From the IMG/VR virus record IMGVR_UViG_3300029993_000005, positions 1-64,000 of that record: a stretch of 64,000 nucleotides of DNA. One strand, given 5' to 3'. A program made the position numbers and the translations under genes. The number at the start of each line of letters is the position of its first letter. Position 1 is the stretch's first letter. Shown piece after piece: positions 35,688 to 50,708 of this stretch. Below the pieces are notes generated by a model. The model had not been told where the DNA came from and did not search any database. It saw only the letters and a program-made list of their open reading frames with translations.

Positions 35688-36182
35688 TTATTTACGATCA
35701 GGAAACAGCTTGGAATTAGTATCAATAATTAGGTCGACTGCGTCTACTGGGACTTCCATTTGCGTGCTGATTTCTTGTTTGGTTGCTTGAGAAACCCACA
35801 TAGAACGCATACGGCCTATGATTTGGTCAAAGGTTTTGCCTTGGTCTTTACCATCAATCAGATGCTGTTCTACCTTACGTGTTTCAGTCTCAATACCATA
35901 CCAATATTTTAGAAGCATGGACCGGTTGGTACTTACCCACTCAGCAACAGATGCTAAGTCCTGATGCGACATACCTTTTGGGATTTTAGTTAAGGCTTCT
36001 GGATGTGGTGCTATGGACAACGACATGTTCAGACTATTGTTTTTGAAATCTGTCGTAGCTTGTGCAACCTTAATACGCGGTACCTTTTTGTTTGATGGTG
36101 CGTCACTGATCATAACAGCCAAGGGCAGACCCGTATCATTTCTTGATAGTCTGGACATGCCGGTTATTTCATGTTTGCTCAT
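35688..36182 (-). CDS. TGLP...LLKYW family protein, copy 2
   Basis: Tandem paralogue of 36202-36708; start moved to ATG 36182. Confidence 0.85.
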   Translation of the reverse strand: MSKHEITGMSRLSRNDTGLPLAVMISDAPSNKKVPRIKVAQATTDFKNNSLNMSLSIAPHPEALTKIPKGMSHQDLASVAEWVSTNRSMLLKYWYGIETETRKVEQHLIDGKDQGKTFDQIIGRMRSMWVSQATKQEISTQMEVPVDAVDLIIDTNSKLFPDRK

Positions 36183-36201
36183 TTTATTTTCCGCACACCA
36201 G

Positions 36202-36708
36202 TTATTTACGAACAGGAAACAAAGCTCGATTTCGTTTAACGATAAGCTCAACAGCCTGAATATTTATTTTAGCTAAAGCTGCCCGGGCCTGCGGCGTCAA
36301 AGATAGGTTCCACGCAGTACGTAACAGGTCTAAGGTAGTGTCAAAGGGCACACCGTAGTCTTTGTTCGAAATAAGCAAATTCTGTACAGTAATGCTGTCC
36401 GTGGTTATACCATACCAATATTTCAGGAGTAGCGAGCGATTCGACACAACCCAATTCGCAACTTTTCTAACGTCGCTAGCTTTAAACTTTATGCCTACAG
36501 GTGGGTCCATCAATTTTTTAGGCTCAAGACTAATAGACAATGAAAAATTCGGGCCTTTGTCGACTAAGCCGTCAGTGGAGTGTGCGATCTTGACGCTAGG
36601 GTCTTTCTTATTTTGAGGTGCTGCGCGAACCATCACAGCAAGAGGCAATCCTGTATGCTGTTGGGCCAGATTCGACATACCAAATATTTCATGCTTGCTC
36701 ATTTTCAT
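36202..36708 (-). CDS. TGLP...LLKYW family protein, copy 3
   Basis: MSKHEI.GMS.L...TGLPLAVM, NRS.LLKYWYGI and LFP.RK shared with copy 2. Confidence 0.85.
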   Translation of the reverse strand: MKMSKHEIFGMSNLAQQHTGLPLAVMVRAAPQNKKDPSVKIAHSTDGLVDKGPNFSLSISLEPKKLMDPPVGIKFKASDVRKVANWVVSNRSLLLKYWYGITTDSITVQNLLISNKDYGVPFDTTLDLLRTAWNLSLTPQARAALAKINIQAVELIVKRNRALFPVRK

Positions 36709-36839: not shown

Positions 36840-38408
36840 TTAAATAACTTTGAGCTTACGTGTATCCTTGTTGGCCTGGAACGAACGATCTTTTAGAATC
36901 GCTGCCTTTACCTCAGCCAAGTCCAGCAGGACCTTGGATCGGGGTCGTTTAAGCCATTCATCCAGTTGCTTCAAAACTAATCGCTGTTCTTTCAGCTTGA
37001 GCTTAAGTACCTCTTGATCCAGTTTTGAAAGTTGCCTGACCCTGAGTTCAAGAATCTGCTTTGCCTGATCCCCATCGATTTCTAGATTCTTGGTGAGGAA
37101 CATATCAGGGTCCTTTGCTCGCAGGGCCTTGACTATGATATCAAGTTTATCACAGGCATAAATCAAGAGTTCCGAATAAGCAATAGCTGCTCGTTGCTTA
37201 GTCTGCCTGTAGGCCAAACTCTTGCGTTCCAACTCGATACGCATTACCAGCCACTGCTTAAGCAACTCAGGTACAGACAGTGCAAGAAACTCAGTCTTGA
37301 ACGTGGTGACGCCATCCAGGATCTGGGCCTTACGTTTCGTCACATTGAGTTTGAAACTCACGCTCTTGCGGGTAGCCAGCCTAATCTTTTCCACATATTT
37401 CTCAAACTGCGTCAGATTGTACGCCGGTTTGCATTCAATGGTAAGCGTGGCTGAACCCTTCGAATTGAAGCATCGTAGAGTCTCAGGCATAGCCCGAACC
37501 TTCTCTACAAATTTCTGTAGGTTGGTGCCCGGAGGCCAGTCATTGATTATCAGTTTCTTGCGGTCTAGTTCTACTTGAAGTTCGGACTCGAACTTAACTT
37601 GGGTCTCGCTGCCGGTGAAAAGCCCCATCCACCCTTTTTTGTTCTCCGGAGTCTTGAGTAATTGACCACCCCATTTGTGCGCAAACTTCAGGGTTCGTGC
37701 ATAATCCGTTGGGGCCAGCACTTCACCTTTGAGCATGCGTTCTAGAATCAGAATTACGGAGTCCGGGGTAAAAGTAGGAATCAATGTCGTGATGCCAACG
37801 CCAATTCCTTCGCCACCATTAAGAATTACATTAGGCAATTGAGCGGGTAGTGTTACAGGCTCCACTTCTTTGTTATCGTAGTTAGGTACAAAGCTAGTGA
37901 CGGATGCATGTAGGTAATTGGGATCAAAGAATGTTTGCCCGTATGCTGATAATTGCATGTTCGTGTAGCGCATGGCCGCCGCACCATCAACCATGTTACC
38001 CCAGTTACCTTTTCCGTAGAACACAGAAGTTGGGTGGTTGACCATGGTGGTTATAGCATCGCTAATTGACTTGTCGCCATGTGGATGATATCGACCTAGT
38101 ACAACGCCTACAATACGAGCTGTCTTTTCAAACGATGAAAAAGCTTCCTTTGCCGTCCCATACATATTGCGGCGCTGTACAGGTTTAAGCCCGTCATACA
38201 TATCAGGTACAGAGCGGTCTAGATTAACAGAGATTGCATAGGTAGTCATACGACTACGACCAAAATCTCTTAACGTGGAAGATTTAATGTCATTGTCTTT
38301 TGTGGGCACCAAATCTGCAGAACTTACGGTTTTACGTGATTTCGTCGTAATTCGACGTTTGGCTATCATCTTATTCCTTGTTGATTTGGGCTGGGGCTTG
38401 AACTTCAA
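36840..38408 (-). CDS. gyrA: type IIA topoisomerase subunit A (GyrA/ParC-like, lacks the pinwheel CTD)
   Basis: DGLKPVQRR, YHPHGD, GNWG, AAAMRYT catalytic Tyr; only 522 aa. Confidence 0.92.
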   Translation of the reverse strand: MKFKPQPKSTRNKMIAKRRITTKSRKTVSSADLVPTKDNDIKSSTLRDFGRSRMTTYAISVNLDRSVPDMYDGLKPVQRRNMYGTAKEAFSSFEKTARIVGVVLGRYHPHGDKSISDAITTMVNHPTSVFYGKGNWGNMVDGAAAMRYTNMQLSAYGQTFFDPNYLHASVTSFVPNYDNKEVEPVTLPAQLPNVILNGGEGIGVGITTLIPTFTPDSVILILERMLKGEVLAPTDYARTLKFAHKWGGQLLKTPENKKGWMGLFTGSETQVKFESELQVELDRKKLIINDWPPGTNLQKFVEKVRAMPETLRCFNSKGSATLTIECKPAYNLTQFEKYVEKIRLATRKSVSFKLNVTKRKAQILDGVTTFKTEFLALSVPELLKQWLVMRIELERKSLAYRQTKQRAAIAYSELLIYACDKLDIIVKALRAKDPDMFLTKNLEIDGDQAKQILELRVRQLSKLDQEVLKLKLKEQRLVLKQLDEWLKRPRSKVLLDLAEVKAAILKDRSFQANKDTRKLKVI

Positions 38409-38421
38409 TCAGTCAGCAGAC

Positions 38422-41400
38422 TTAGCCCTCGCTATCACAGTTTCCACCCGTAGCATTTGCGGGCAAGCCTAACATGTCCCTGCGATAAGCTACGTCTTCA
38501 TTCATGAGTCTGACAAAATCAACGTGGTCCTCGGACTCAAGAGCCTTGATTTTTATCAGGGATCTAGTAGCTGGATCCATAGCCATGATACGCATCAAGT
38601 CTACATCAATCTCACCGTACCCTTTAACGTGATTTATTAGCGTTGATGATGGGGCTTTAATTTTCTTGAGCTTAACCTGAACTTGACTTAAGGTCTCACC
38701 GCACACTAATTGGTCCTTATGAATAGCATAAAACTCAGGGCTGTTAGCCACGTAGATCAAACCTCGGGTGAACAGGTCCGGCAGATACTTATAAAACAGA
38801 GATAGGAGCAAAGAGTTGATGTGACAATTGCTGGACACGACTCCTGACGGCAGGACGAACGAATGATAGCGTGGGACTGTCAAACAATAGACGGGCACCG
38901 GCTCTTTCAGTTCTTGAACTCTAAGCTTGGATACCGCTTGGTAACCCAATCCACTTTCTTTGTCTGTTAAAGCCTGGTCTTTCAGATGATTGTTTGAGGG
39001 ACACCACACACGATCACCGACCTTCATATCCTTGGACTTAACGTACACAAGTTTTTCATGCTCTGGATGTGGTTCAGTATCACGACCATACATTGCTCGG
39101 GTTACTACACACACCCATTTATGATTTTCATCAACTCTGAATTTCGAACGTCCGATTTCAAAAGCCATTAGTCGGTCTACGTTTTTGACCAATTGCGCGG
39201 TTGCTGGTGCCCAGATTTCTTTTCCGTGGTGCCATACAGGCACCTCAAACACTAGTTGTTCTGCAGTGTTTCCCCGTTCCTGAGTTAAAGAACTATTAGC
39301 GAGGCCTCTAATAGTTGCCGTATGCTCAGTCCAAACAAAGTCCTCTGATTTTGACTGGCTGCGGGCCATACTCCTGACCCGAATTTGAGTGTCGCCAATA
39401 AATGGGCCATCTGGATCCGGGTCAGCCAAACAGATGATTTTGCCAACCGTGAGTTTTGCACAAGGGTCTACGGCCTTTGCGTCATATCCAATAGCTGCCA
39501 GAATATTAACAATTTCTTCACTTTCCAGTGTTGTACCTTTTTTATCCTTTTTTAGTGCATTTTTGACTTTGCCTTTTAATGGCAGTACAGCCTGGTAGGG
39601 GAACCTGGCCTCTTTGGCCGAGCCGCCTGCCGATTCCCCTTCTACGATAAAGAGTTCACGATCCGCAACTTTGGTACGCATATCAAATGAAGCATATTTG
39701 GCGGGCAGTCCATTGCGCTTCACAGCATTCAACGTGGCTGCTGCCTTTTTCGACATCGTGAATTTGGTCTTCAACTCATTGAGCTTAGTCGCTCTTTCAC
39801 ATAAGCGTGAAGCCAATGCTTTATTAGCCTTGAAGAATTCTATGGTGGCTACCGTTAATTTCTTTTGAAATTCAGGACCCATGCGCTCATCGCTAAGTTT
39901 TACCTTATCCTGGGAATTGAACTTGGCTTTATGCAATTTTGCGTTGACTAGGCCAACCAAGCCTTCTTTGAAATCCGATTCACGGAAAGGCAGAATTACT
40001 TTTCCTTTGACCGTTCGGGTCTTGATATGGGGCTTTAAACCCGCGTATAGGGCGCTGACAACGCTATCAACGTGCTTGCCACCCTGGCTATTGGGTAGCC
40101 CGTTGGTGAACCCCCTGAGATCACATCCATCGTAATTGGAGAACGACACAACTACGTCTGCTGCATTCGGATCACCGGGTTCTGATTTATACTCGAAATA
40201 TTTTGATTCGGCACCAACTTTAAACTTGTCTAAGCGTGCTTGAACATACTCAGCGACACCTGTCTTTGACAAGAACTGACGCTTGCCCCTGGGGGTGGAA
40301 ATAATGATGGCGAAACCTGGATTGAAATAAGCCATGATTTCAGCCCATTCAAGTGCTAGTGCCCCAGGGAACTTGTTGGTCGAGAAAATTGAAGCATCGG
40401 GCTTGAAATGAATAACCGTACCCTTCTTGACCAGTGTGCCGTCCGGACCTTTCGGAGCCTTACATTTTGCAACGGGGGATGTTAGCTTACCTTTCTTGAA
40501 ACCTACCGAGTACCATTGGTTCTCGTAGAAAGTATGAACATCAAAGAATTCGGCGGTAGCATTAGTTCCTTTAGCGCCAATACCATGAGTATTTGATACC
40601 AGCACTCCGGGTTCAATAAAATAAGTATGTTGGTTGTCAACAGTCATGCCGTAAACAGGCACGGGTTCTGTTGTGTGGAAAGTTTCCACACTAATGACCG
40701 TGAGCTCACTGTGCGTATACGGCGTGATCAGCATTTGTCCAGGTTCCAACTGTTGGGCCTGAACTTTCAACGTCCAGTAATCAGTGCGAACGTAGTACGG
40801 ATGGTCGGGAGTATTCTCAATAACCGAACCATCGCTTAGGGTTACGCGCACCAATTCATCAACGTATTTGGTTAGTTGTACATGTGATATGAAAGACTGT
40901 GCCTGGACATCATTATCAACGTCCCAAGCAACGATAGGAATTGGTTCTTTATTCGTGGTCCAACGTTCGTATAGTTCTTTGAAGGCTACGGTGTTTCCTT
41001 TAGCTATTCTGACTTGTGTTGAACCAACAAAGCAACCAATCGACACCTCGTAGGCTTCGCTATCATACTTACCTGACGTGTGCAAGGCACCAAAAGCCGC
41101 CTGCATCGTGTCCATTTTGTTGACGACATCCTTGCCATTCACATGAATGTGAGTTTTGGTCACGCCTTGAGGGATGCCGTGGCCCCTATCCAGTACCCAA
41201 AAACTACCGTCGCTATCTACGTGCAACAATACTGCATCGTTACGACCGGCCAGCCCTTCGTCCAACCCGTTGTCCATAAGCTCACGTACAACTAACCACA
41301 ATCCCGACGAATCAGTACCCCCAATGTATTGACTTGCGTTTTTGCGAATAGTGTCAGGCCAAACAAGAGTTTCAATATTTTTACTGGTGTAGGCTGCTAC

Positions 41401-41445
41401 TTTCTTTAACGCTGGATTTGCTTTTGTATTTGGTGTAAGGGCCAT
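38422..41445 (-). CDS. gyrB: type IIA topoisomerase subunit B (GyrB/ParE-like) with two inteins; 666 aa after splicing
   Basis: ELMDNGLDE, D.GHGIP, SIG|THGIG, VEGESAGG, PLKGK, DPDPDG|CHI, KGYGE. Confidence 0.95.
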   Translation of the reverse strand: MALTPNTKANPALKKVAAYTSKNIETLVWPDTIRKNASQYIGGTDSSGLWLVVRELMDNGLDEGLAGRNDAVLLHVDSDGSFWVLDRGHGIPQGVTKTHIHVNGKDVVNKMDTMQAAFGALHTSGKYDSEAYEVSIGCFVGSTQVRIAKGNTVAFKELYERWTTNKEPIPIVAWDVDNDVQAQSFISHVQLTKYVDELVRVTLSDGSVIENTPDHPYYVRTDYWTLKVQAQQLEPGQMLITPYTHSELTVISVETFHTTEPVPVYGMTVDNQHTYFIEPGVLVSNTHGIGAKGTNATAEFFDVHTFYENQWYSVGFKKGKLTSPVAKCKAPKGPDGTLVKKGTVIHFKPDASIFSTNKFPGALALEWAEIMAYFNPGFAIIISTPRGKRQFLSKTGVAEYVQARLDKFKVGAESKYFEYKSEPGDPNAADVVVSFSNYDGCDLRGFTNGLPNSQGGKHVDSVVSALYAGLKPHIKTRTVKGKVILPFRESDFKEGLVGLVNAKLHKAKFNSQDKVKLSDERMGPEFQKKLTVATIEFFKANKALASRLCERATKLNELKTKFTMSKKAAATLNAVKRNGLPAKYASFDMRTKVADRELFIVEGESAGGSAKEARFPYQAVLPLKGKVKNALKKDKKGTTLESEEIVNILAAIGYDAKAVDPCAKLTVGKIICLADPDPDGPFIGDTQIRVRSMARSQSKSEDFVWTEHTATIRGLANSSLTQERGNTAEQLVFEVPVWHHGKEIWAPATAQLVKNVDRLMAFEIGRSKFRVDENHKWVCVVTRAMYGRDTEPHPEHEKLVYVKSKDMKVGDRVWCPSNNHLKDQALTDKESGLGYQAVSKLRVQELKEPVPVYCLTVPRYHSFVLPSGVVSSNCHINSLLLSLFYKYLPDLFTRGLIYVANSPEFYAIHKDQLVCGETLSQVQVKLKKIKAPSSTLINHVKGYGEIDVDLMRIMAMDPATRSLIKIKALESEDHVDFVRLMNEDVAYRRDMLGLPANATGGNCDSEG
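38827..39405 (-). mobile_element. mini-intein 2 (193 aa), Pro-start, class-3-like, in the TOPRIM DxDG motif
   Basis: PFIGDT...NHKW (B12 Trp)...VYCLTV (F4 Cys)...GVVSSN|C; removal restores DPDG-CHINSLLL. Confidence 0.9.
40591..41034 (-). mobile_element. mini-intein 1 (148 aa), class 1, in the GHKL ATP lid
   Basis: CFVGST...TPDHPY...VYGMTV...GVLVSN|T; removal restores SIG-THGIG. Confidence 0.92.
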
Positions 41446-41458
41446 GGTCTTTATTAAG

Positions 41459-42070
41459 TTAGGCAGCGATTACGAAACGATAGGTAAATGGTGTAATTGC
41501 TTTCTCTAGTTTGGATTCGAAAGCTATAAATTGAGTATGAACGTCTCTAGCGGTTGGTCCCCACAAGTCAAGAACGTTATCCACTAGTACTCCAACTCTG
41601 TGTCCTGCATCAGTTTGATGTGCAAGTCGGTCTCCCCAGAAATACATACCATTAGCATCCGATGATAGTCTTAGACTCGAACACACGTAATTACCAGTTT
41701 TCAACAGCTCACGAATAAACCAATCATTGGGGCTAGTGGGTCCTCCCAGATCAGCAATGAGTTCCCGCCATACTTCTACCTGAATGGCTATTCTAGGTAG
41801 CACGGTATTACGCAAGACCAGCATGTGGACTAACCAACGTATCTCTGGATCGCAATAGGGTTCTTCCGTCGAGTGTATCAAATAGACTTCGTTGTGGGCT
41901 AAACTGAATTCCTCGAACTTGTTCCCGTTAAAATAGTTGGTGCTCAACAATTTATAGTCTTTACGGAAACGCTGGAGCTCAGCTGCATTAAACGCAAGAT
42001 GACCTTCGGCATTAGCCTTACCTAGACCCAAGTCGAGTAGATATGCAGCAGACGCAACATCGCAGCCCAT
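41459..42070 (-). CDS. hypothetical protein
   Basis: 203-aa ORF. Confidence 0.7.
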   Translation of the reverse strand: MGCDVASAAYLLDLGLGKANAEGHLAFNAAELQRFRKDYKLLSTNYFNGNKFEEFSLAHNEVYLIHSTEEPYCDPEIRWLVHMLVLRNTVLPRIAIQVEVWRELIADLGGPTSPNDWFIRELLKTGNYVCSSLRLSSDANGMYFWGDRLAHQTDAGHRVGVLVDNVLDLWGPTARDVHTQFIAFESKLEKAITPFTYRFVIAA

Positions 42071-49832: not shown

Positions 49833-50708
49833 TTACGAAATGTTGAAGCCAGCCAGTGTCTTGGCACGCACACGTTCACCGAGATCGCGATTTTCAAAAC
49901 GTTGTGCACGGATGCTGGGTGGTGCACCAAAAAATCCCTGTGCTACGTTGAAGCCATCGGCTACACCCGCTTTGACAGCCGCTAGGATGTCATCCTTAGT
50001 CCAGGAAAAATTCTGTGTACTGGGGTTGCGAACCTCGCGAACTCGATCAAGCATGAAATCAAACTTGATTTCCTCCTCTAAGGAATAGAAGGTAACGGGT
50101 AGGTGGCGGTAATGATTGTATATGACACCACGTTTCACTAGATGCATATCGATGTCACGGTGCATTTGGCTGAAGGCCCGACCCTCAGGAGTATAAGCAC
50201 CAACGTCATAGCAATAGCCACGATCATCGCGTTCCATATAATACTGGATAGACTGGATAACCCAAGTGTAGGTTAAACGTTCCTTAGCAGTCTGCTGTTG
50301 AACCCAAACTTCGTCACCTTCCCAAAATTTGGTATCAGGTAATGGTCCGACGTAAGAACGGTTCACGAGTTTATTTTGCAAATCGTTGTAATTGTCCTCC
50401 TTAAGAAGACTGGCATATTCTTCTTGGTAGCGACGGTCGTCTTCTTGTTTGTCTATCAGACAGATAGAGTAACCATCACTGTTTTCAGTGACGCCGTTGT
50501 CCCAAGACACCACGGCTACCCCGTCTTGTTCATACACGCCTTGTTCGCGACACAGATAACCAATGCGTTCTCGATATGACAGAATACGCGTCTTGGATAG
50601 TATGGTGCCCTCTGTGCCATCGGCTACGCCCCGGCGACCCCAGACACGAGCCTCGTTATCCATTTGCATTACGACGCGATCACCGACACGAAGTTGTGAA
50701 CTTAACAT
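49833..50708 (-). CDS. hypothetical with SH3-like segments
   Basis: LRVGDRV...GTEGTI; FWEGDEV. Confidence 0.75.
   Translation of the reverse strand: MLSSQLRVGDRVVMQMDNEARVWGRRGVADGTEGTILSKTRILSYRERIGYLCREQGVYEQDGVAVVSWDNGVTENSDGYSICLIDKQEDDRRYQEEYASLLKEDNYNDLQNKLVNRSYVGPLPDTKFWEGDEVWVQQQTAKERLTYTWVIQSIQYYMERDDRGYCYDVGAYTPEGRAFSQMHRDIDMHLVKRGVIYNHYRHLPVTFYSLEEEIKFDFMLDRVREVRNPSTQNFSWTKDDILAAVKAGVADGFNVAQGFFGAPPSIRAQRFENRDLGERVRAKTLAGFNIS

What the first reader, a model, noticed from the sequence alone, without database searches (positions are those of the whole stretch)
38827..39405. Proline-initiated class-3-type mini-intein inside the TOPRIM DxD motif of topoisomerase B
Seen: the insert begins PFIGDT (no nucleophile at position 1). 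It has NHKW (Trp B12) and VYCLTV (Cys F4), ends GVVSSN|C with Ser at G5 and Ser replacing the penultimate His, and has no endonuclease. Established: class-3 inteins use the Trp-Cys-Thr triplet and a branched intermediate on Cys F4; the mycobacteriophage Bethlehem DnaB intein also starts with Pro. A W-C-S version lacking the G6 His, in a type II topoisomerase, is unusual. Splicing is obligatory because it sits next to the metal-binding aspartates.
Basis: partly seen in the sequence, partly recalled or inferred. Interest (0 to 1): 0.7.

Follow-up and report, generated by a model that had tools for sequence, protein, structure and literature searches.

The report
Proline-start intein in phage topoisomerase
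A 193-residue self-splicing protein insert (intein) that begins with proline sits inside the metal-binding motif of a jumbo phage's topoisomerase II and belongs to an unannotated family of at least 80 such inserts. They most likely splice through an internal cysteine, and they have ordinary cysteine-start relatives at the same site, which gives a natural series for studying how that unusual mechanism arose.

Summary
Window 38827-39405 (minus strand) encodes a 193-aa insert, DPDPDG|PFIGDT...GVVSSN|CHINSLL, in the TOPRIM motif of a 1007-aa GyrB-like topoisomerase II large subunit. The genome is a phiRSL1-like jumbo phage of 230 kb. Intein-free relatives read DPDPDG-CHINSLL, which fixes both boundaries.

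The insert folds as a HINT domain (pLDDT 94; Z 16.7 to the Pho RadA intein). It has no endonuclease.

At least 80 homologous inserts occupy the same site. Invariant residues are Pro1, His B:10, Cys F:4, Ser G:5, Asn G:7 and Gly-1. Position +1 is Cys in 78 and Ser in 2. B:12 is Phe in 44 and Trp in 34. G:6 is never His. Cys at +1 tracks intein presence.

The best explanation is an active mini-intein using the class-3 route: Cys F:4 thioester, transfer to Cys+1, then Asn cyclisation.

It fails two letters of the published class-3 signature (Thr G:5; Ser/Thr at +1). It was absent from a 1701-member class-3 census. It is far closer to Cys1 inteins of the same phage genes (hhalign E 1e-23) than to canonical class 3 (E 2e-4). 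A class-1 allele and a Cys1+Cys F:4 allele exist at the same site. Its relation to canonical class 3 is unresolved.

I rate it a new variant of a known kind, of moderate to high interest.

The parts
38422..41445 (-). Host gene: GyrB-like topoisomerase II large subunit precursor. It is 1007 aa with two inteins; the exteins total 666 aa.
   Evidence: ORF. Pfam DNA_gyraseB, Toprim and DNA_gyraseB_C, and NCBIfam gyrB/parE hits. It is 59% identical to the Ralstonia phage phiRSL1 gyrB product.
38827..39405 (-). The finding: a 193-aa mini-intein, precursor residues 681-873, running PFIGDT...GVVSSN.
   Evidence: Translation. Boundaries from intein-free alleles. HINT fold at pLDDT 94.3, with Z 16.7 to the Pho RadA intein. 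TIGR01443 scores 22.1 bits against a cut-off of 15.6.
39406..39423 (-). N-extein junction: the TOPRIM acidic motif DPDPDG (aa 675-680). Gly-1 is at 39406-39408, so the N-terminal scissile bond is Gly680-Pro681.
   Evidence: Gly-1 is present in 80 of 80 family members. The Pfam Toprim match ends at residue 681.
39403..39405 (-). Block A position 1: Pro, which is not a nucleophile.
   Evidence: All 80 inserts collected at this site start with Pro, and P0079 is a further Pro1 member. One homologous insert (P0081) starts with Cys.
39115..39123 (-). Block B core His95-Lys96-Trp97, that is B:10, B:11 and B:12.
   Evidence: His is invariant (79 of 79). B:12 is Phe 44, Trp 34, Leu 1.
38884..38886 (-). 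Block F position 4: Cys174, the proposed initiating nucleophile and first branch point.
   Evidence: Invariant in 79 of 79 members, and the only Cys column conserved across the family. It aligns with Asp F:4 of the Pho RadA intein.
38857..38865 (-). Block F His181 (F:13) and Phe183 (F:15).
   Evidence: His in 66 and Gly in 13 members; Phe in 79 of 79. The F:13 and F:15 roles are from PMC2807308 and PMC7891396.
38827..38835 (-). Block G Ser191-Ser192-Asn193, that is G:5, G:6 and G:7. Asn is the cyclising residue.
   Evidence: G:5 Ser in 79 of 79. G:6 is Ser 51, Gly 13, Ala 12, Lys 3 and never His. Asn in 79 of 79.
38824..38826 (-). C-extein +1 Cys874, the second branch point. It is followed by HINSLL of the TOPRIM motif.
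   Evidence: +1 is Cys in 78 and Ser in 2 members. Intein-free homologues carry C, W, R, K, A, F, G or H at this position.
40591..41034 (-). Second intein of the same precursor: a class-1 mini-intein of 148 aa (residues 138-285), SIG|CFVGST...GVLVSN|THGIG, in the ATPase domain. It is homologous to the Pro1 intein.
   Evidence: It is an insert relative to phiRSL1, BcepSauron and BCSR5. Pfam PT-HINT and Intein_splicing hits. hhalign of the two intein families gives E 1.2e-23 over 145 columns.
36840..38408 (-). Downstream partner gene: GyrA-like topoisomerase II subunit, 522 aa.
   Evidence: Pfam DNA_topoisoIV at E 1.9e-65. The same gene order is seen in phiRSL1, BcepSauron and BCSR5.

Best explanation
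The insert is a functional mini-intein that must remove itself from the topoisomerase II large-subunit precursor before the TOPRIM metal site can form.

It starts with Pro, so it cannot make the usual N-terminal (thio)ester. The proposed route is the class-3 one:
1. Cys174 (F:4), helped by His95 (B:10), the aromatic residue at B:12 (Trp97) and the hydroxyl of Ser191 (G:5), attacks the Gly680-Pro681 peptide bond. The N-extein is then held as a thioester on Cys174 (block F branched intermediate).
2. The N-extein is passed by trans-thioesterification to Cys874 (+1), giving the block G branched intermediate.
3. Asn193 cyclises, probably helped by His181 (F:13) because G:6 is not His, and releases the intein.
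4. An S-to-N acyl shift leaves ...DPDPDG-CHINSLL..., the sequence seen in intein-free relatives.

What is shown: the anatomy, the fold, the exact boundaries and the conservation pattern. What is inferred: every chemical step.

The intein has no homing endonuclease, has the same base composition as its host gene, and has diverged roughly in step with it. It therefore looks like an old, mostly vertically inherited resident of this phage gene. One 455-aa relative still carries an HNH-like insert.
For: Boundaries. Intein-free BCSR5, P0095 and P0098 join DPD(P/S)DG directly to CHINSLL.

Fold. AlphaFold2 gives pLDDT 94.3 and pTM 0.89. All top Foldseek and VIA matches are inteins: Z 16.7 over 147 aligned residues at 2.2 A to the Pho RadA intein, and Z 14.3 to the class-3 Msm DnaB intein.

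Sequence. A profile of 69 family members hits the Pho RadA intein at E 8.9e-10 and places Cys174 on Asp F:4. TIGR01443 intein_Cterm is over its cut-off.

Selection on the catalytic set. In the 79 aligned of 80 members (25-77% identity), His B:10, Cys F:4, Phe F:15, Ser G:5 and Asn G:7 are invariant, and all 80 have Gly-1. All 80 also start with Pro, but selected on that residue; the unbiased count is. No other Cys column is conserved.

The +1 nucleophile tracks the intein. It is Cys or Ser in all intein-bearing alleles. In intein-free homologues it is W, W, R, K, A, R, F, G or H, and Cys only in the three closest intein-free alleles, as expected after precise loss.

Ser+1 members. P0089, the fragment P0088 and the Cys1 allele P0081 have Ser at +1 and still keep Cys F:4. 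This fits thioester-to-ester transfer better than direct attack by the +1 residue.

Precedents. Pro1 inteins splice through Cys F:4 (PMC2807308). Bvi IcmO shows the obligatory F:4-then-+1 order with two cysteines (PMC5222942). A Cys-His-Thr(OH) triad is described in PMC7664689, and Ser supplies the same hydroxyl. AceL NrdHF works without Trp B:12, His F:13 and His G:6 (PMC7891396).

Not an intron. The frame is open and no Rfam family matches 38000-42000.

Long residence. GC is 46.6% in the intein and 46.0% in the gene. Intein and extein identities correlate at rho 0.64.
Against: - No experiment or proteomic observation of the spliced junction is available. Every chemical step is inferred.
- The published class-3 signature is not fully met: G:5 is Ser rather than Thr, B:12 is Phe in most relatives, and +1 is Cys.
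- Cys at F:4 also occurs in Cys1 inteins of the same lineage (P0078, P0080, P0090, P0093). Its presence alone therefore does not prove that it is the initiating nucleophile.
- With Cys at +1, a class-2-type direct attack is chemically conceivable.
- Pfam Intein_splicing scores below its gathering cut-off on the intein alone (21.2 against 35.8 bits).
Confidence: 0.75

Rival explanations
1. Class-2-like splicing. Cys874 (+1) attacks the Gly680-Pro681 amide directly, as in KlbA inteins. Cys174 would be only a structural or activating residue.
For: - +1 is Cys in 78 of 80 members.
- G:6 is Ser in the window, and all known class-2 inteins have Ser at G:6 (PMC4031507).
- Cys at F:4 co-occurs with Cys1 in related inteins, where it need not be the first nucleophile.
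Against: - Class-2 inteins are all KlbA orthologues with Ala1, and they need Asp at F:4 (PMC4031507). Here F:4 is invariant Cys, and the family profile found no KlbA chain among solved structures at E up to 10.
- Family members with Ser+1 keep Cys F:4, and a Ser hydroxyl attacking an amide directly is unlikely.
- In Bvi IcmO, the one studied intein with Cys at both F:4 and +1, Cys+1 could not replace Cys F:4 (PMC5222942).
Confidence: 0.1
2. Inactive relic. The insert is a degenerate HINT domain that is never excised, and the topoisomerase either tolerates it or is non-functional.
For: - There is no direct evidence of splicing.
- Three canonical residues are missing (Cys/Ser1, Thr G:5, His G:6).
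- There is no endonuclease.
- Pfam scores below its cut-off.
Against: - The catalytic set (His B:10, Cys F:4, Asn G:7, +1 Cys/Ser) is invariant across about 80 members that are otherwise only 25-77% identical. This is not expected of a relic.
- The insert splits DxDxDG from the following xHI inside the TOPRIM fold.
- Cys at +1 is kept only where the intein is or recently was present.
- The gene and its GyrA-like partner are intact and conserved in complete jumbo phage genomes.
Confidence: 0.05
3. Conditional (redox- or metal-gated) splicing. The intein works by the class-3 route but acts as a switch. The two catalytic cysteines, or Cys174 with the nearby variable Cys99 (B:14), form a disulfide or bind metal, delaying topoisomerase maturation until conditions in the infected cell allow it.
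For: - Both nucleophiles are cysteines.
- A third Cys at B:14 is present in the window and in 23 of 79 relatives.
- Class-3 N-cleavage is inhibited by H2O2 (PMC7664689).
- Paper titles in the list describe the mycobacterial class-3 DnaB intein as an oxidative-stress sensor and as zinc-inhibited (PMC6195587, PMC7360933). I did not read these papers in full.
Against: - This is purely speculative here.
- The extra cysteines are not conserved in the family.
- Nothing in the sequence distinguishes regulated from constitutive splicing.
Confidence: 0.1

Closest known systems
Mycobacteriophage Bethlehem 'DnaB' intein (MP-Be; class-3 prototype, Tori et al. 2010, PMC2807308)
   Same: - It starts with Pro.
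- It has His B:10 and Trp B:12, Cys at F:4, a C-terminal Asn and a phage origin.
- Splicing through a block F branched intermediate was demonstrated for it, and is proposed here.
   Different: - MP-Be is 341 aa with a LAGLIDADG endonuclease, ends T-H-N|T, and sits in the 903-aa gp11 (terminase-type host).
- The window's intein is a 193-aa mini-intein ending S-S-N|C in a topoisomerase TOPRIM motif.
- There is no meaningful sequence similarity. hhalign of the family against MP-Be gives probability 0.6%. Against a 117-sequence canonical class-3 profile it gives E 2e-4 over 25 columns only.
Burkholderia vietnamiensis IcmO intein (Bvi IcmO; PMC5222942)
   Same: It is a class-3 mini-intein with Cys at both F:4 and +1, so both branched intermediates are thioesters. 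It was shown to need Cys F:4 first.
   Different: It has the full WCT triplet and lies in a plasmid IcmO gene. [quoted passage not shown] I did not have its sequence, so similarity was not tested.
AceL NrdHF split intein (PMC7891396, PDB 6ZGQ)
   Same: It was shown experimentally to be class 3 despite a variant triplet (MCT) and no His at G:6. It comes from phage-like metagenomic DNA. It shows that the deviations seen here are compatible with efficient class-3 splicing.
   Different: - It is naturally split, lies in ribonucleotide reductase, keeps Thr at G:5 and lacks the F:13 His that the window's intein has.
- Structural match is Z 13.6 at 18% identity.
- The family profile did not find it among solved structures.
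Cys1 inteins of the same phage replication genes: the class-1 intein at the ATPase site of this very protein, the class-1 allele at the same TOPRIM site (P0087), and Cys1+Cys F:4 alleles (P0081 at the TOPRIM site; P0078 and P0080 in PolA-like proteins)
   Same: - They are clearly homologous over the full length. hhalign gives E 1.2e-23 over 145 columns, and blocks match: CF(V/T)GDT against PF(V/I)GDT, VPVY(D/G)xTV against VPVYCLTV, and GVLV(S/A)N against G(I/V)VS(S/A/G)N.
- P0087 and P0081 use the identical insertion point DxDxDG|...|SHI.
   Different: They begin with Cys. Many have Asp or Gly at F:4, Val at G:5 and often His at G:6, which makes them ordinary class-1 inteins or mixed-signature ones.
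Pyrococcus horikoshii RadA mini-intein (PDB 4E2T/2LQM)
   Same: It is the closest solved structure and the closest PDB sequence: Z 16.7, 147 residues at 2.2 A, 22% identity, profile E 8.9e-10.
   Different: It is an archaeal class-1 intein with a standard N-terminal nucleophile, Asp at F:4 and His-Asn at the C-terminus.
Class-3 inteins that retain an N-terminal nucleophile (MP-Catera Gp206, Nocardioides JS614 TOPRIM, Tfu2914; Tori and Perler 2011). The paper is not held, so this is recalled from memory and from citations in PMC5222942 and PMC4031507.
   Same: They have mixed class-1/class-3 signatures like P0081, P0078 and P0080, and one of them sits in a TOPRIM-domain protein.
   Different: As I recall, they have the WCT triplet and belong to the canonical lineage.

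Membership tests
Intein (HINT-fold protein-splicing element) | Hedgehog/intein fold | tested here: met
   The AlphaFold2 model has pLDDT 94.3. The 50 best structural matches listed are all HINT-fold domains (inteins, intein-like BIL domains, Hedgehog autoprocessing domains), with Z 12.8-16.7.
Intein (HINT-fold protein-splicing element) | In-frame insert in a conserved site of a host protein, with intein-free alleles that are colinear across the site | tested here: met
   BCSR5, P0095 and P0098 read DPD(P/S)DG-CHINSLL. More distant phage topoisomerases read DxDxDG-xHI.
Intein (HINT-fold protein-splicing element) | Block B His, C-terminal Asn and a Cys/Ser/Thr at +1 | tested here: met
   His95, Asn193 and Cys874. 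His and Asn are invariant in the family, and +1 is Cys in 78 and Ser in 2. TIGR01443 is over its cut-off.
Intein (HINT-fold protein-splicing element) | Excision with ligation of the exteins | not testable with these tools
   This needs expression or proteomics. Only indirect support is available: conservation of the catalytic set, and the link between Cys+1 and intein presence.
Class 3 inteins (Tori et al. 2010 signature) | No Cys/Ser/Thr at intein position 1 | tested here: met
   Pro1 in the window and in 80 of 81 inserts at this site; P0081 has Cys1.
Class 3 inteins (Tori et al. 2010 signature) | Cys at block F position 4 | tested here: met
   Cys174 is invariant in 79 of 79 members. It aligns to F:4 Asp of Pho RadA and to F:4 Asp/Gly of the sister class-1 inteins.
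Class 3 inteins (Tori et al. 2010 signature) | Trp at block B position 12 | tested here: inconclusive
   Met in the window (Trp97). The family has Phe 44, Trp 34 and Leu 1, so an aromatic residue, not Trp, is what is conserved.
Class 3 inteins (Tori et al. 2010 signature) | Thr at block G position 5 | tested here: not met
   Ser191, and Ser in 79 of 79 members. Ser keeps the hydroxyl. WCS and FCS triplets were 4 of 1702 in the published census.
Class 3 inteins (Tori et al. 2010 signature) | Ser or Thr at +1 | tested here: not met
   +1 is Cys in 78 of 80 members. The only published exception with Cys+1 was Bvi IcmO (PMC5222942).
Class 3 inteins (operational definition of Hoffmann et al. 2020) | No Cys at the intein N-terminus and a Cys at motif C2:4 (= F:4) | tested here: met
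   However, the accessions of the phiRSL1, BcepSauron and BcepSaruman proteins are not in that paper's list of 1701.
Class 3 inteins (mechanism) | Block F branched thioester intermediate; splicing abolished by mutation of Cys F:4 | not testable with these tools
   This needs mutagenesis and analysis of intermediates.
Class 3 inteins (canonical monophyletic lineage, PMC4031507) | Descent from the same ancestor as the WCT inteins of terminase/DnaB-type genes | tested here: inconclusive
   - Profile similarity to canonical class 3 is marginal (E 2e-4 over 25 columns). To Cys1 inteins of the same genes it is E 1.2e-23.
- The family profile finds no class-3 chain in the PDB at E up to 10.
- In ML trees, however, the long canonical branch (about 2.6-2.9 changes per column) joins among Pro1 TOPRIM inteins rather than inside the Cys1 cluster. 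Support is weak, and the result holds after the catalytic columns are removed. The trees have no independent root.
Class 2 inteins (KlbA type) | Ala1, Asp at F:4 required, orthology to Mja KlbA | tested here: not met
   The window has Pro1 and Cys at F:4, and no KlbA match in the PDB profile search. Only Ser G:6 and Cys+1 agree (PMC4031507).
Class 1 inteins | Cys, Ser or Thr at position 1 forming a linear (thio)ester | tested here: not met
   Pro1. The nearest relatives by sequence are nevertheless class 1.

The most novel reading that the evidence does not exclude
This family may be a natural record of how the internal-cysteine (class-3) splicing route arises from ordinary class-1 inteins. 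One insertion point (DxDxDG|xHI of phage topoisomerase II) holds three kinds of allele:
- a class-1 allele (Cys1, Asp F:4, His-Asn, Ser+1; P0087);
- a mixed allele (Cys1, Cys F:4, Ser G:5; P0081);
- about 80 Pro1 / Cys F:4 / Ser G:5 alleles.

One reading is that the Pro1 family is a second, independent origin of class-3 splicing. The other is that it is the deep link between phage class-1 inteins and the canonical WCT lineage. Either would revise two published views: that class 3 arose in a single event, and that it is unlikely to evolve directly from class 1 (PMC4031507, PMC7664689).
Probability: 0.4. Interest if true: 0.75.

Novelty: new variant of a known kind. Interest (0 to 1): 0.6.

Why it matters
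For phage biology. An essential replication enzyme of phiRSL1-like jumbo phages is made as a precursor that needs one or two protein-splicing events. In the window's phage, two mechanistically different inteins sit in one polypeptide. Public annotations do not record this. The phiRSL1, BcepSauron and BcepSaruman records simply say topoisomerase, and most family members carry no precomputed intein Pfam hit.

For the intein field.
- The family widens the sequence definition of inteins that lack an N-terminal nucleophile: an aromatic residue at B:12, Cys at F:4, Ser at G:5, no His at G:6, and Cys at +1.
- It adds a new host protein and insertion site.
- It offers homologous class-1, mixed and Pro1 alleles at a single site. 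The question of how class 3 could evolve, which Beyer et al. 2020 judged improbable from class 1 after a failed engineering attempt, becomes testable by swapping a handful of residues between natural relatives.

For tools. Compact inteins of 154-197 aa without an endonuclease, with an internal nucleophile and Gly at -1, may be useful for protein ligation or cleavage.

Tried and rejected
- Pfam on the intein alone gave only sub-threshold Intein_splicing and PT-HINT hits. I did not rely on these. Fold, profile and allele comparisons carry the argument.
- I looked for the Bethlehem 'DnaB' intein in the DnaB-like gene gp62 and in gp52. gp62 has no intein, and gp52 holds a different, class-1 intein. 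The published Pro1 intein lies in the 903-aa gp11.
- The family profile found nothing in the Bethlehem genome at E up to 10, not even its class-1 intein. That test does not discriminate.
- hhalign against the single MP-Be sequence was negative. I repeated it with a 117-sequence canonical class-3 profile and a class-1 control.
- I first read the trees rooted on canonical class 3 as showing an independent origin. After adding more Cys1 relatives and removing the catalytic columns, the canonical branch still joined among the Pro1 inteins, with weak support. I withdrew the claim of independent origin and report the relation as unresolved.
- Intron or RNA explanations: no Rfam match in 38000-42000, and the frame is open.
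- Recent horizontal acquisition: rejected for the window. Base composition equals that of the host gene and intein and extein divergence correlate. P0002 is a possible exception.
- Tori and Perler 2011 (PMC3133030) is not held, so statements about it are marked as recalled.
- The AlphaFold coordinates were not exposed to scripts, so active-site distances could not be measured.
- Sequencing-read tools were not used, because protein splicing leaves no trace in DNA or RNA.
Full report
**1. What is in the sequence**

The finding lies on the minus strand, inside one long ORF, window 38422-41445 (1007 aa). Pfam and NCBIfam identify the protein as a GyrB-like type IIA topoisomerase subunit, with DNA_gyraseB, Toprim and DNA_gyraseB_C domains and 220-310 bits to the gyrB/parE models. 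The gene immediately downstream (36840-38408, minus) is the GyrA-like partner.

The window is part of a 230,110-bp virus record estimated 97% complete. The nearest named relatives of the protein are Ralstonia phage phiRSL1 (59% identity) and Burkholderia phages BcepSauron and BcepSaruman. This is a phiRSL1-like jumbo phage.

Translating 38827-39405 on the minus strand gives 193 codons without a stop, PFIGDTQIRV...PSGVVSSN.

**2. Boundaries**

An alignment with phiRSL1, BcepSauron and BCSR5 shows two inserts in the window's protein.

- Residues 138-285 are absent from all three relatives.
- Residues 681-873 are present in phiRSL1 and BcepSauron but absent from BCSR5. BCSR5 reads ...VADPDPDG-CHINSLL... 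with no gap.

Two metagenomic intein-free alleles (P0095, P0098) read the same way.

It separates the acidic DxDxDG of the TOPRIM motif from the following xHI. More distant phage topoisomerases have DADDDG-AHI, DADVDG-RHI, DADPDG-FHI and similar. The Pfam Toprim match stops at residue 681. That the insert must leave before the metal site can form is an inference from this position.

**3. It is an intein**

- An AlphaFold2 model built on 69 family members has mean pLDDT 94.3 and pTM 0.89, and is a single beta-rich domain.
- Every good structural match is an intein or another HINT domain. The best is the Pyrococcus horikoshii RadA mini-intein (Z 16.7, 147 residues at 2.2 A, 22% identity). The class-3 Msm DnaB and Mch DnaB-1 inteins score Z 14.3 and 14.2, and AceL NrdHF scores 13.6.
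- A profile of the family finds the RadA intein among solved structures at E 8.9e-10. It aligns ...vPvYCLtVpkyHnFvlpsGvvSsN with ...[23 protein letters not shown], which places Cys174 on the block F position 4 Asp.
- TIGR01443 (intein C-terminal region) is over its curated cut-off. Pfam Intein_splicing is below its own. This explains why the element is unannotated in phiRSL1, BcepSauron and BcepSaruman and why most relatives carry no precomputed intein domain.
- There is no RNA-family match in 38000-42000.
- At 193 aa there is no room for a homing endonuclease.

**4. Block assignment (codon coordinates)**

| Block | Residues |
|---|---|
| A | Pro1-Phe-Ile-Gly-Asp-Thr6 |
| B | Asp92 (B:7), His95 (B:10), Lys96, Trp97 (B:12) |
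| F | Val172-Tyr173-Cys174 (F:4), His181 (F:13), Phe183 (F:15) |
| G | Gly188, Ser191 (G:5), Ser192 (G:6), Asn193 (G:7), Cys874 (+1) |

**5. It is a family, not a curiosity**

Searches of 5.8 billion and 1.84 billion proteins found the same insert at the same site in about 80 phage or metagenomic topoisomerases, 154-197 aa long, plus one of 455 aa. They are 25-77% identical to the window's copy.

| Position | Counts in 79 aligned members (of 80) |
|---|---|
| B:10 | His 79 |
| B:12 | Phe 44, Trp 34, Leu 1 |
| F:4 | Cys 79 |
| F:13 | His 66, Gly 13 |
| F:15 | Phe 79 |
| G:5 | Ser 79 |
| G:6 | Ser 51, Gly 13, Ala 12, Lys 3 |
| G:7 | Asn 79 |
| -1 | Gly 80 of 80 |
| +1 | Cys 78, Ser 2 |

No other cysteine column is conserved. 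Without pre-selecting on the first residue, 80 inserts at the site start with Pro and one (P0081) starts with Cys. A further Pro1 member with DADEDG was found later (P0079).

The 455-aa member (P0096) has the same P...HRW...MYCLTV...CSSN|C frame around an HNH-like segment, which matches Pfam HNH_3 at E 1.8e-4, below cut-off.

**6. The +1 residue tracks the intein**

Intein-free alleles within the same topoisomerase clade carry Cys (BCSR5, P0095, P0098) or Trp, Trp, Arg, Lys (P0099-P0102) at the position after DxDxDG. More distant ones carry Ala, Arg, Phe, Gly or His. The host enzyme therefore does not need Cys there. It is kept where the intein is present, and it lingers in the closest intein-free alleles, as expected after precise loss. 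This is the best indirect evidence that the inteins actually splice.

**7. History**

- The intein's G+C content (46.6%) matches the gene (46.0%) and the window (45.9%).
- Identity to the window's intein correlates with identity of the flanking exteins (Spearman 0.64, 70 proteins). On average the intein is more diverged (49%) than the exteins (61-64%).

This fits long, mostly vertical residence. P0002 is an outlier, at 77% in the intein against about 60% in the exteins, and may reflect intein exchange.

**8. Mechanism**

Pro cannot start splicing. Two routes are known for inteins without an N-terminal nucleophile (PMC5222942, PMC4031507).

- Class 2: direct attack of Cys+1. It is known only in KlbA orthologues with Ala1, and it requires Asp at F:4.
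- Class 3: attack by Cys F:4, giving a block F branched thioester, then transfer to +1.

The evidence favours class 3, for four reasons.

- Cys F:4 is invariant.
- It is retained in the members with Ser+1 (P0089, the fragment P0088 and the Cys1 allele P0081).
- There is no similarity to KlbA.
- In Bvi IcmO, which has cysteines at both positions, Cys+1 could not substitute for Cys F:4 (PMC5222942).

Ser at G:5 offers the same hydroxyl as the Thr of the Cys-His-Thr triad described for Mch DnaB-1 (PMC7664689). An aromatic residue at B:12 is kept.

The missing G:6 His has precedents. Mutating it had little effect in MP-Be (PMC2807308). It is often absent from phage inteins (PMC5050341). AceL NrdHF splices quickly without G:6 His, F:13 His and Trp B:12 (PMC7891396). 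Here His F:13 is present and may assist Asn cyclisation.

All steps are inferred. I put the class-3 route at about 0.75.

**9. Comparison with what is known**

By the original signature (no N-terminal nucleophile, Trp-Cys-Thr, Ser/Thr at +1; PMC2807308) the window's intein meets three of five features and the family meets two to three. By the operational definition of Hoffmann et al. 2020 (no Cys at the start, Cys at C2:4) it qualifies.

[quoted passage not shown] Its accession table does not contain the phiRSL1 or BcepSauron/BcepSaruman topoisomerase accessions, although it does contain other phage proteins. The caveat is that I searched a text version of a PDF.

Full-text searches found no paper describing an intein in phiRSL1 or in phage topoisomerase II large subunits.

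**10. Relatives**

Canonical class-3 inteins form a tight sequence family. MP-Be matches the Msm and Mch DnaB inteins at E 1e-22 to 1e-24. 2987 proteins match MP-Be at E up to 1e-5; of the 120 best-scoring, the 117 whose intein could be extracted mostly read P/A-LALDT...H-x-W...C...T-H-N|T/S.

The topoisomerase family is not part of that sequence cluster.

| Comparison (hhalign) | Result |
|---|---|
| Family vs 117-sequence canonical class-3 profile | E 2e-4, 25 columns (block B only) |
| Family vs class-1 inteins at the ATPase site of the same topoisomerases (including the window's own intein 1) | E 1.2e-23, probability 99.6%, 145 columns end to end |
| Canonical class 3 vs those class-1 inteins | E 8e-5 |

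Blocks of the family and the class-1 inteins match one to one:

- CF(V/T)GDT against PF(V/I)GDT;
- PDHP(F/Y) against xxHK(W/F);
- VPVY(D/G)xTV against VPVYCLTV;
- GVLV(S/A)N|T against G(I/V)VS(S/A/G)N|C.

The same lineage also includes:

- a class-1 allele at the identical TOPRIM site (P0087: DADADG|CLLGET...VYDLTV...FVHN|SHI);
- a mixed allele at that site (P0081: Cys1, HKW, Cys F:4, Ser G:5, Ser+1);
- Cys1 inteins with Cys at F:4 in PolA-like and other proteins (P0078, P0080, P0090, P0093).

**11. Trees**

ML trees of 49-54 splicing domains put canonical class 3 on a very long branch (2.6-2.9 changes per column) and group the Cys1 inteins together (99/96). The canonical branch joins the rest among the Pro1 TOPRIM inteins rather than inside the Cys1 cluster. 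This also holds after positions A:1, B:12, F:4, G:5 and G:6 are removed. Support is weak (83/57 and 90/63) and the junction lies next to another long branch.

The trees have no independent root. They allow three readings:
- an independent origin of the Pro1/Cys F:4 state within this phage lineage;
- a deep common origin with canonical class 3, with the TOPRIM family as the slowly evolving link to class 1;
- a long-branch artefact.

I therefore do not claim independent origin. I give about 0.4 to the broader statement that this family documents a class-1 to class-3 transition, whether independent or ancestral.

**12. Verdict**

It needs three corrections.

- The element does not carry the canonical signature.
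- The deviations individually have precedents.
- It is one member of a large, old, unannotated family whose closest kin are class-1 inteins in the same genes.

I rate it a new variant of a known kind, interest 0.6. It is not a new principle. It is a clean and sizeable natural system that bears on how internal-cysteine splicing evolved, and it shows that the replication enzyme of these jumbo phages needs protein splicing.

Noticed in passing
window 40591-41034 (-), precursor residues 138-285: There is a second intein in the same protein. It is a 148-aa class-1 mini-intein, SIG|CFVGST...VPVYGMTV...GVLVSN|THGIG, in the ATPase domain. It has Gly at F:4 and no His at G:6. It is absent from phiRSL1, BcepSauron and BCSR5, and homologous to the Pro1 intein (hhalign E 1.2e-23).
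   Followed up: partly
proteins P0087 (residues 910-1050), P0081 (130-329), P0096 (525-979), P0079 (793-961): The identical TOPRIM insertion point holds several other alleles in other phage or metagenomic topoisomerases:
- a class-1 allele (Cys1, Asp F:4, VHN|S);
- a Cys1 + Cys F:4 + Ser G:5 allele;
- a 455-aa Pro1 allele with an HNH-like insert;
- a Pro1 allele after DADEDG.
   Followed up: partly
proteins P0078 and P0080 (PolA-like, ...APD(F/Y)|CL(A/T)GDT...VYCFTV...SSN|SQME(L/I)R); P0090; P0093: Related inteins combine Cys1 with Cys at F:4 in other replication proteins. P0078 also has an HNH-like segment. Whether these use Cys1 or Cys F:4 first is unknown.
   Followed up: no
protein P0076 (3009 aa); also P0082, P0084, P0090: These metagenomic polyproteins carry many intein-like units in one chain. 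P0076 has at least six by HMM domain hits, which is unusually dense.
   Followed up: no
protein P0002 compared with the window: Its intein is 77% identical to the window's, but the flanking exteins are only about 60% identical. Every other family member shows the opposite pattern. This may be intein exchange or gene conversion between phage lineages.
   Followed up: no
own genome outside the window, G000:C1 about 127401-129680 (+); loci L017 and L019: A third intein lies in another gene, starting ...MSQEA|CLIGSTQIKLQNG. Pfam Intein_splicing scores 39.9 bits for the N-terminal part. The C-terminal splicing block lies about 2 kb downstream in a separate open frame, so it may hold an endonuclease, be interrupted, or be split.
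   Followed up: no
window 35688-36251 (-) and 36202-36708 (-): Two adjacent, overlapping ORFs (187 and 168 aa) are clear paralogues of each other (MSKHEI.GMS.L....TGLPLAVM...LLLKYWYGI...). They lie just downstream of the GyrA-like gene. Function unknown.
   Followed up: no
L001 2438-2980 (phiRSL1 ORF332), compared with window 41459-42070 (-): phiRSL1 has a free-standing HNH-AP2 endonuclease gene directly upstream of its intein-bearing gyrB. The window has an unrelated 203-aa ORF with no Pfam hit in that position. A free-standing endonuclease could help an endonuclease-less intein to spread.
   Followed up: no
L004 7578-9296 (-) and L005 7260-9971 (+), Mycobacterium phage Bethlehem: The published 'DnaB' Pro1 intein lies in the 903-aa gp11, which is annotated as hypothetical; its relatives are annotated as terminase large subunit. 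It is not in the DnaB-like gp62. gp52 carries a separate class-1 intein.
   Followed up: yes
window 49833-50708 (-): There is a weak match of the intein family profile (E 0.0037, profile positions 108-160) at the start of a 291-aa ORF (MLSSQLRVGDRVVMQ...). It is probably only an SH3-like beta-hairpin resemblance.
   Followed up: no
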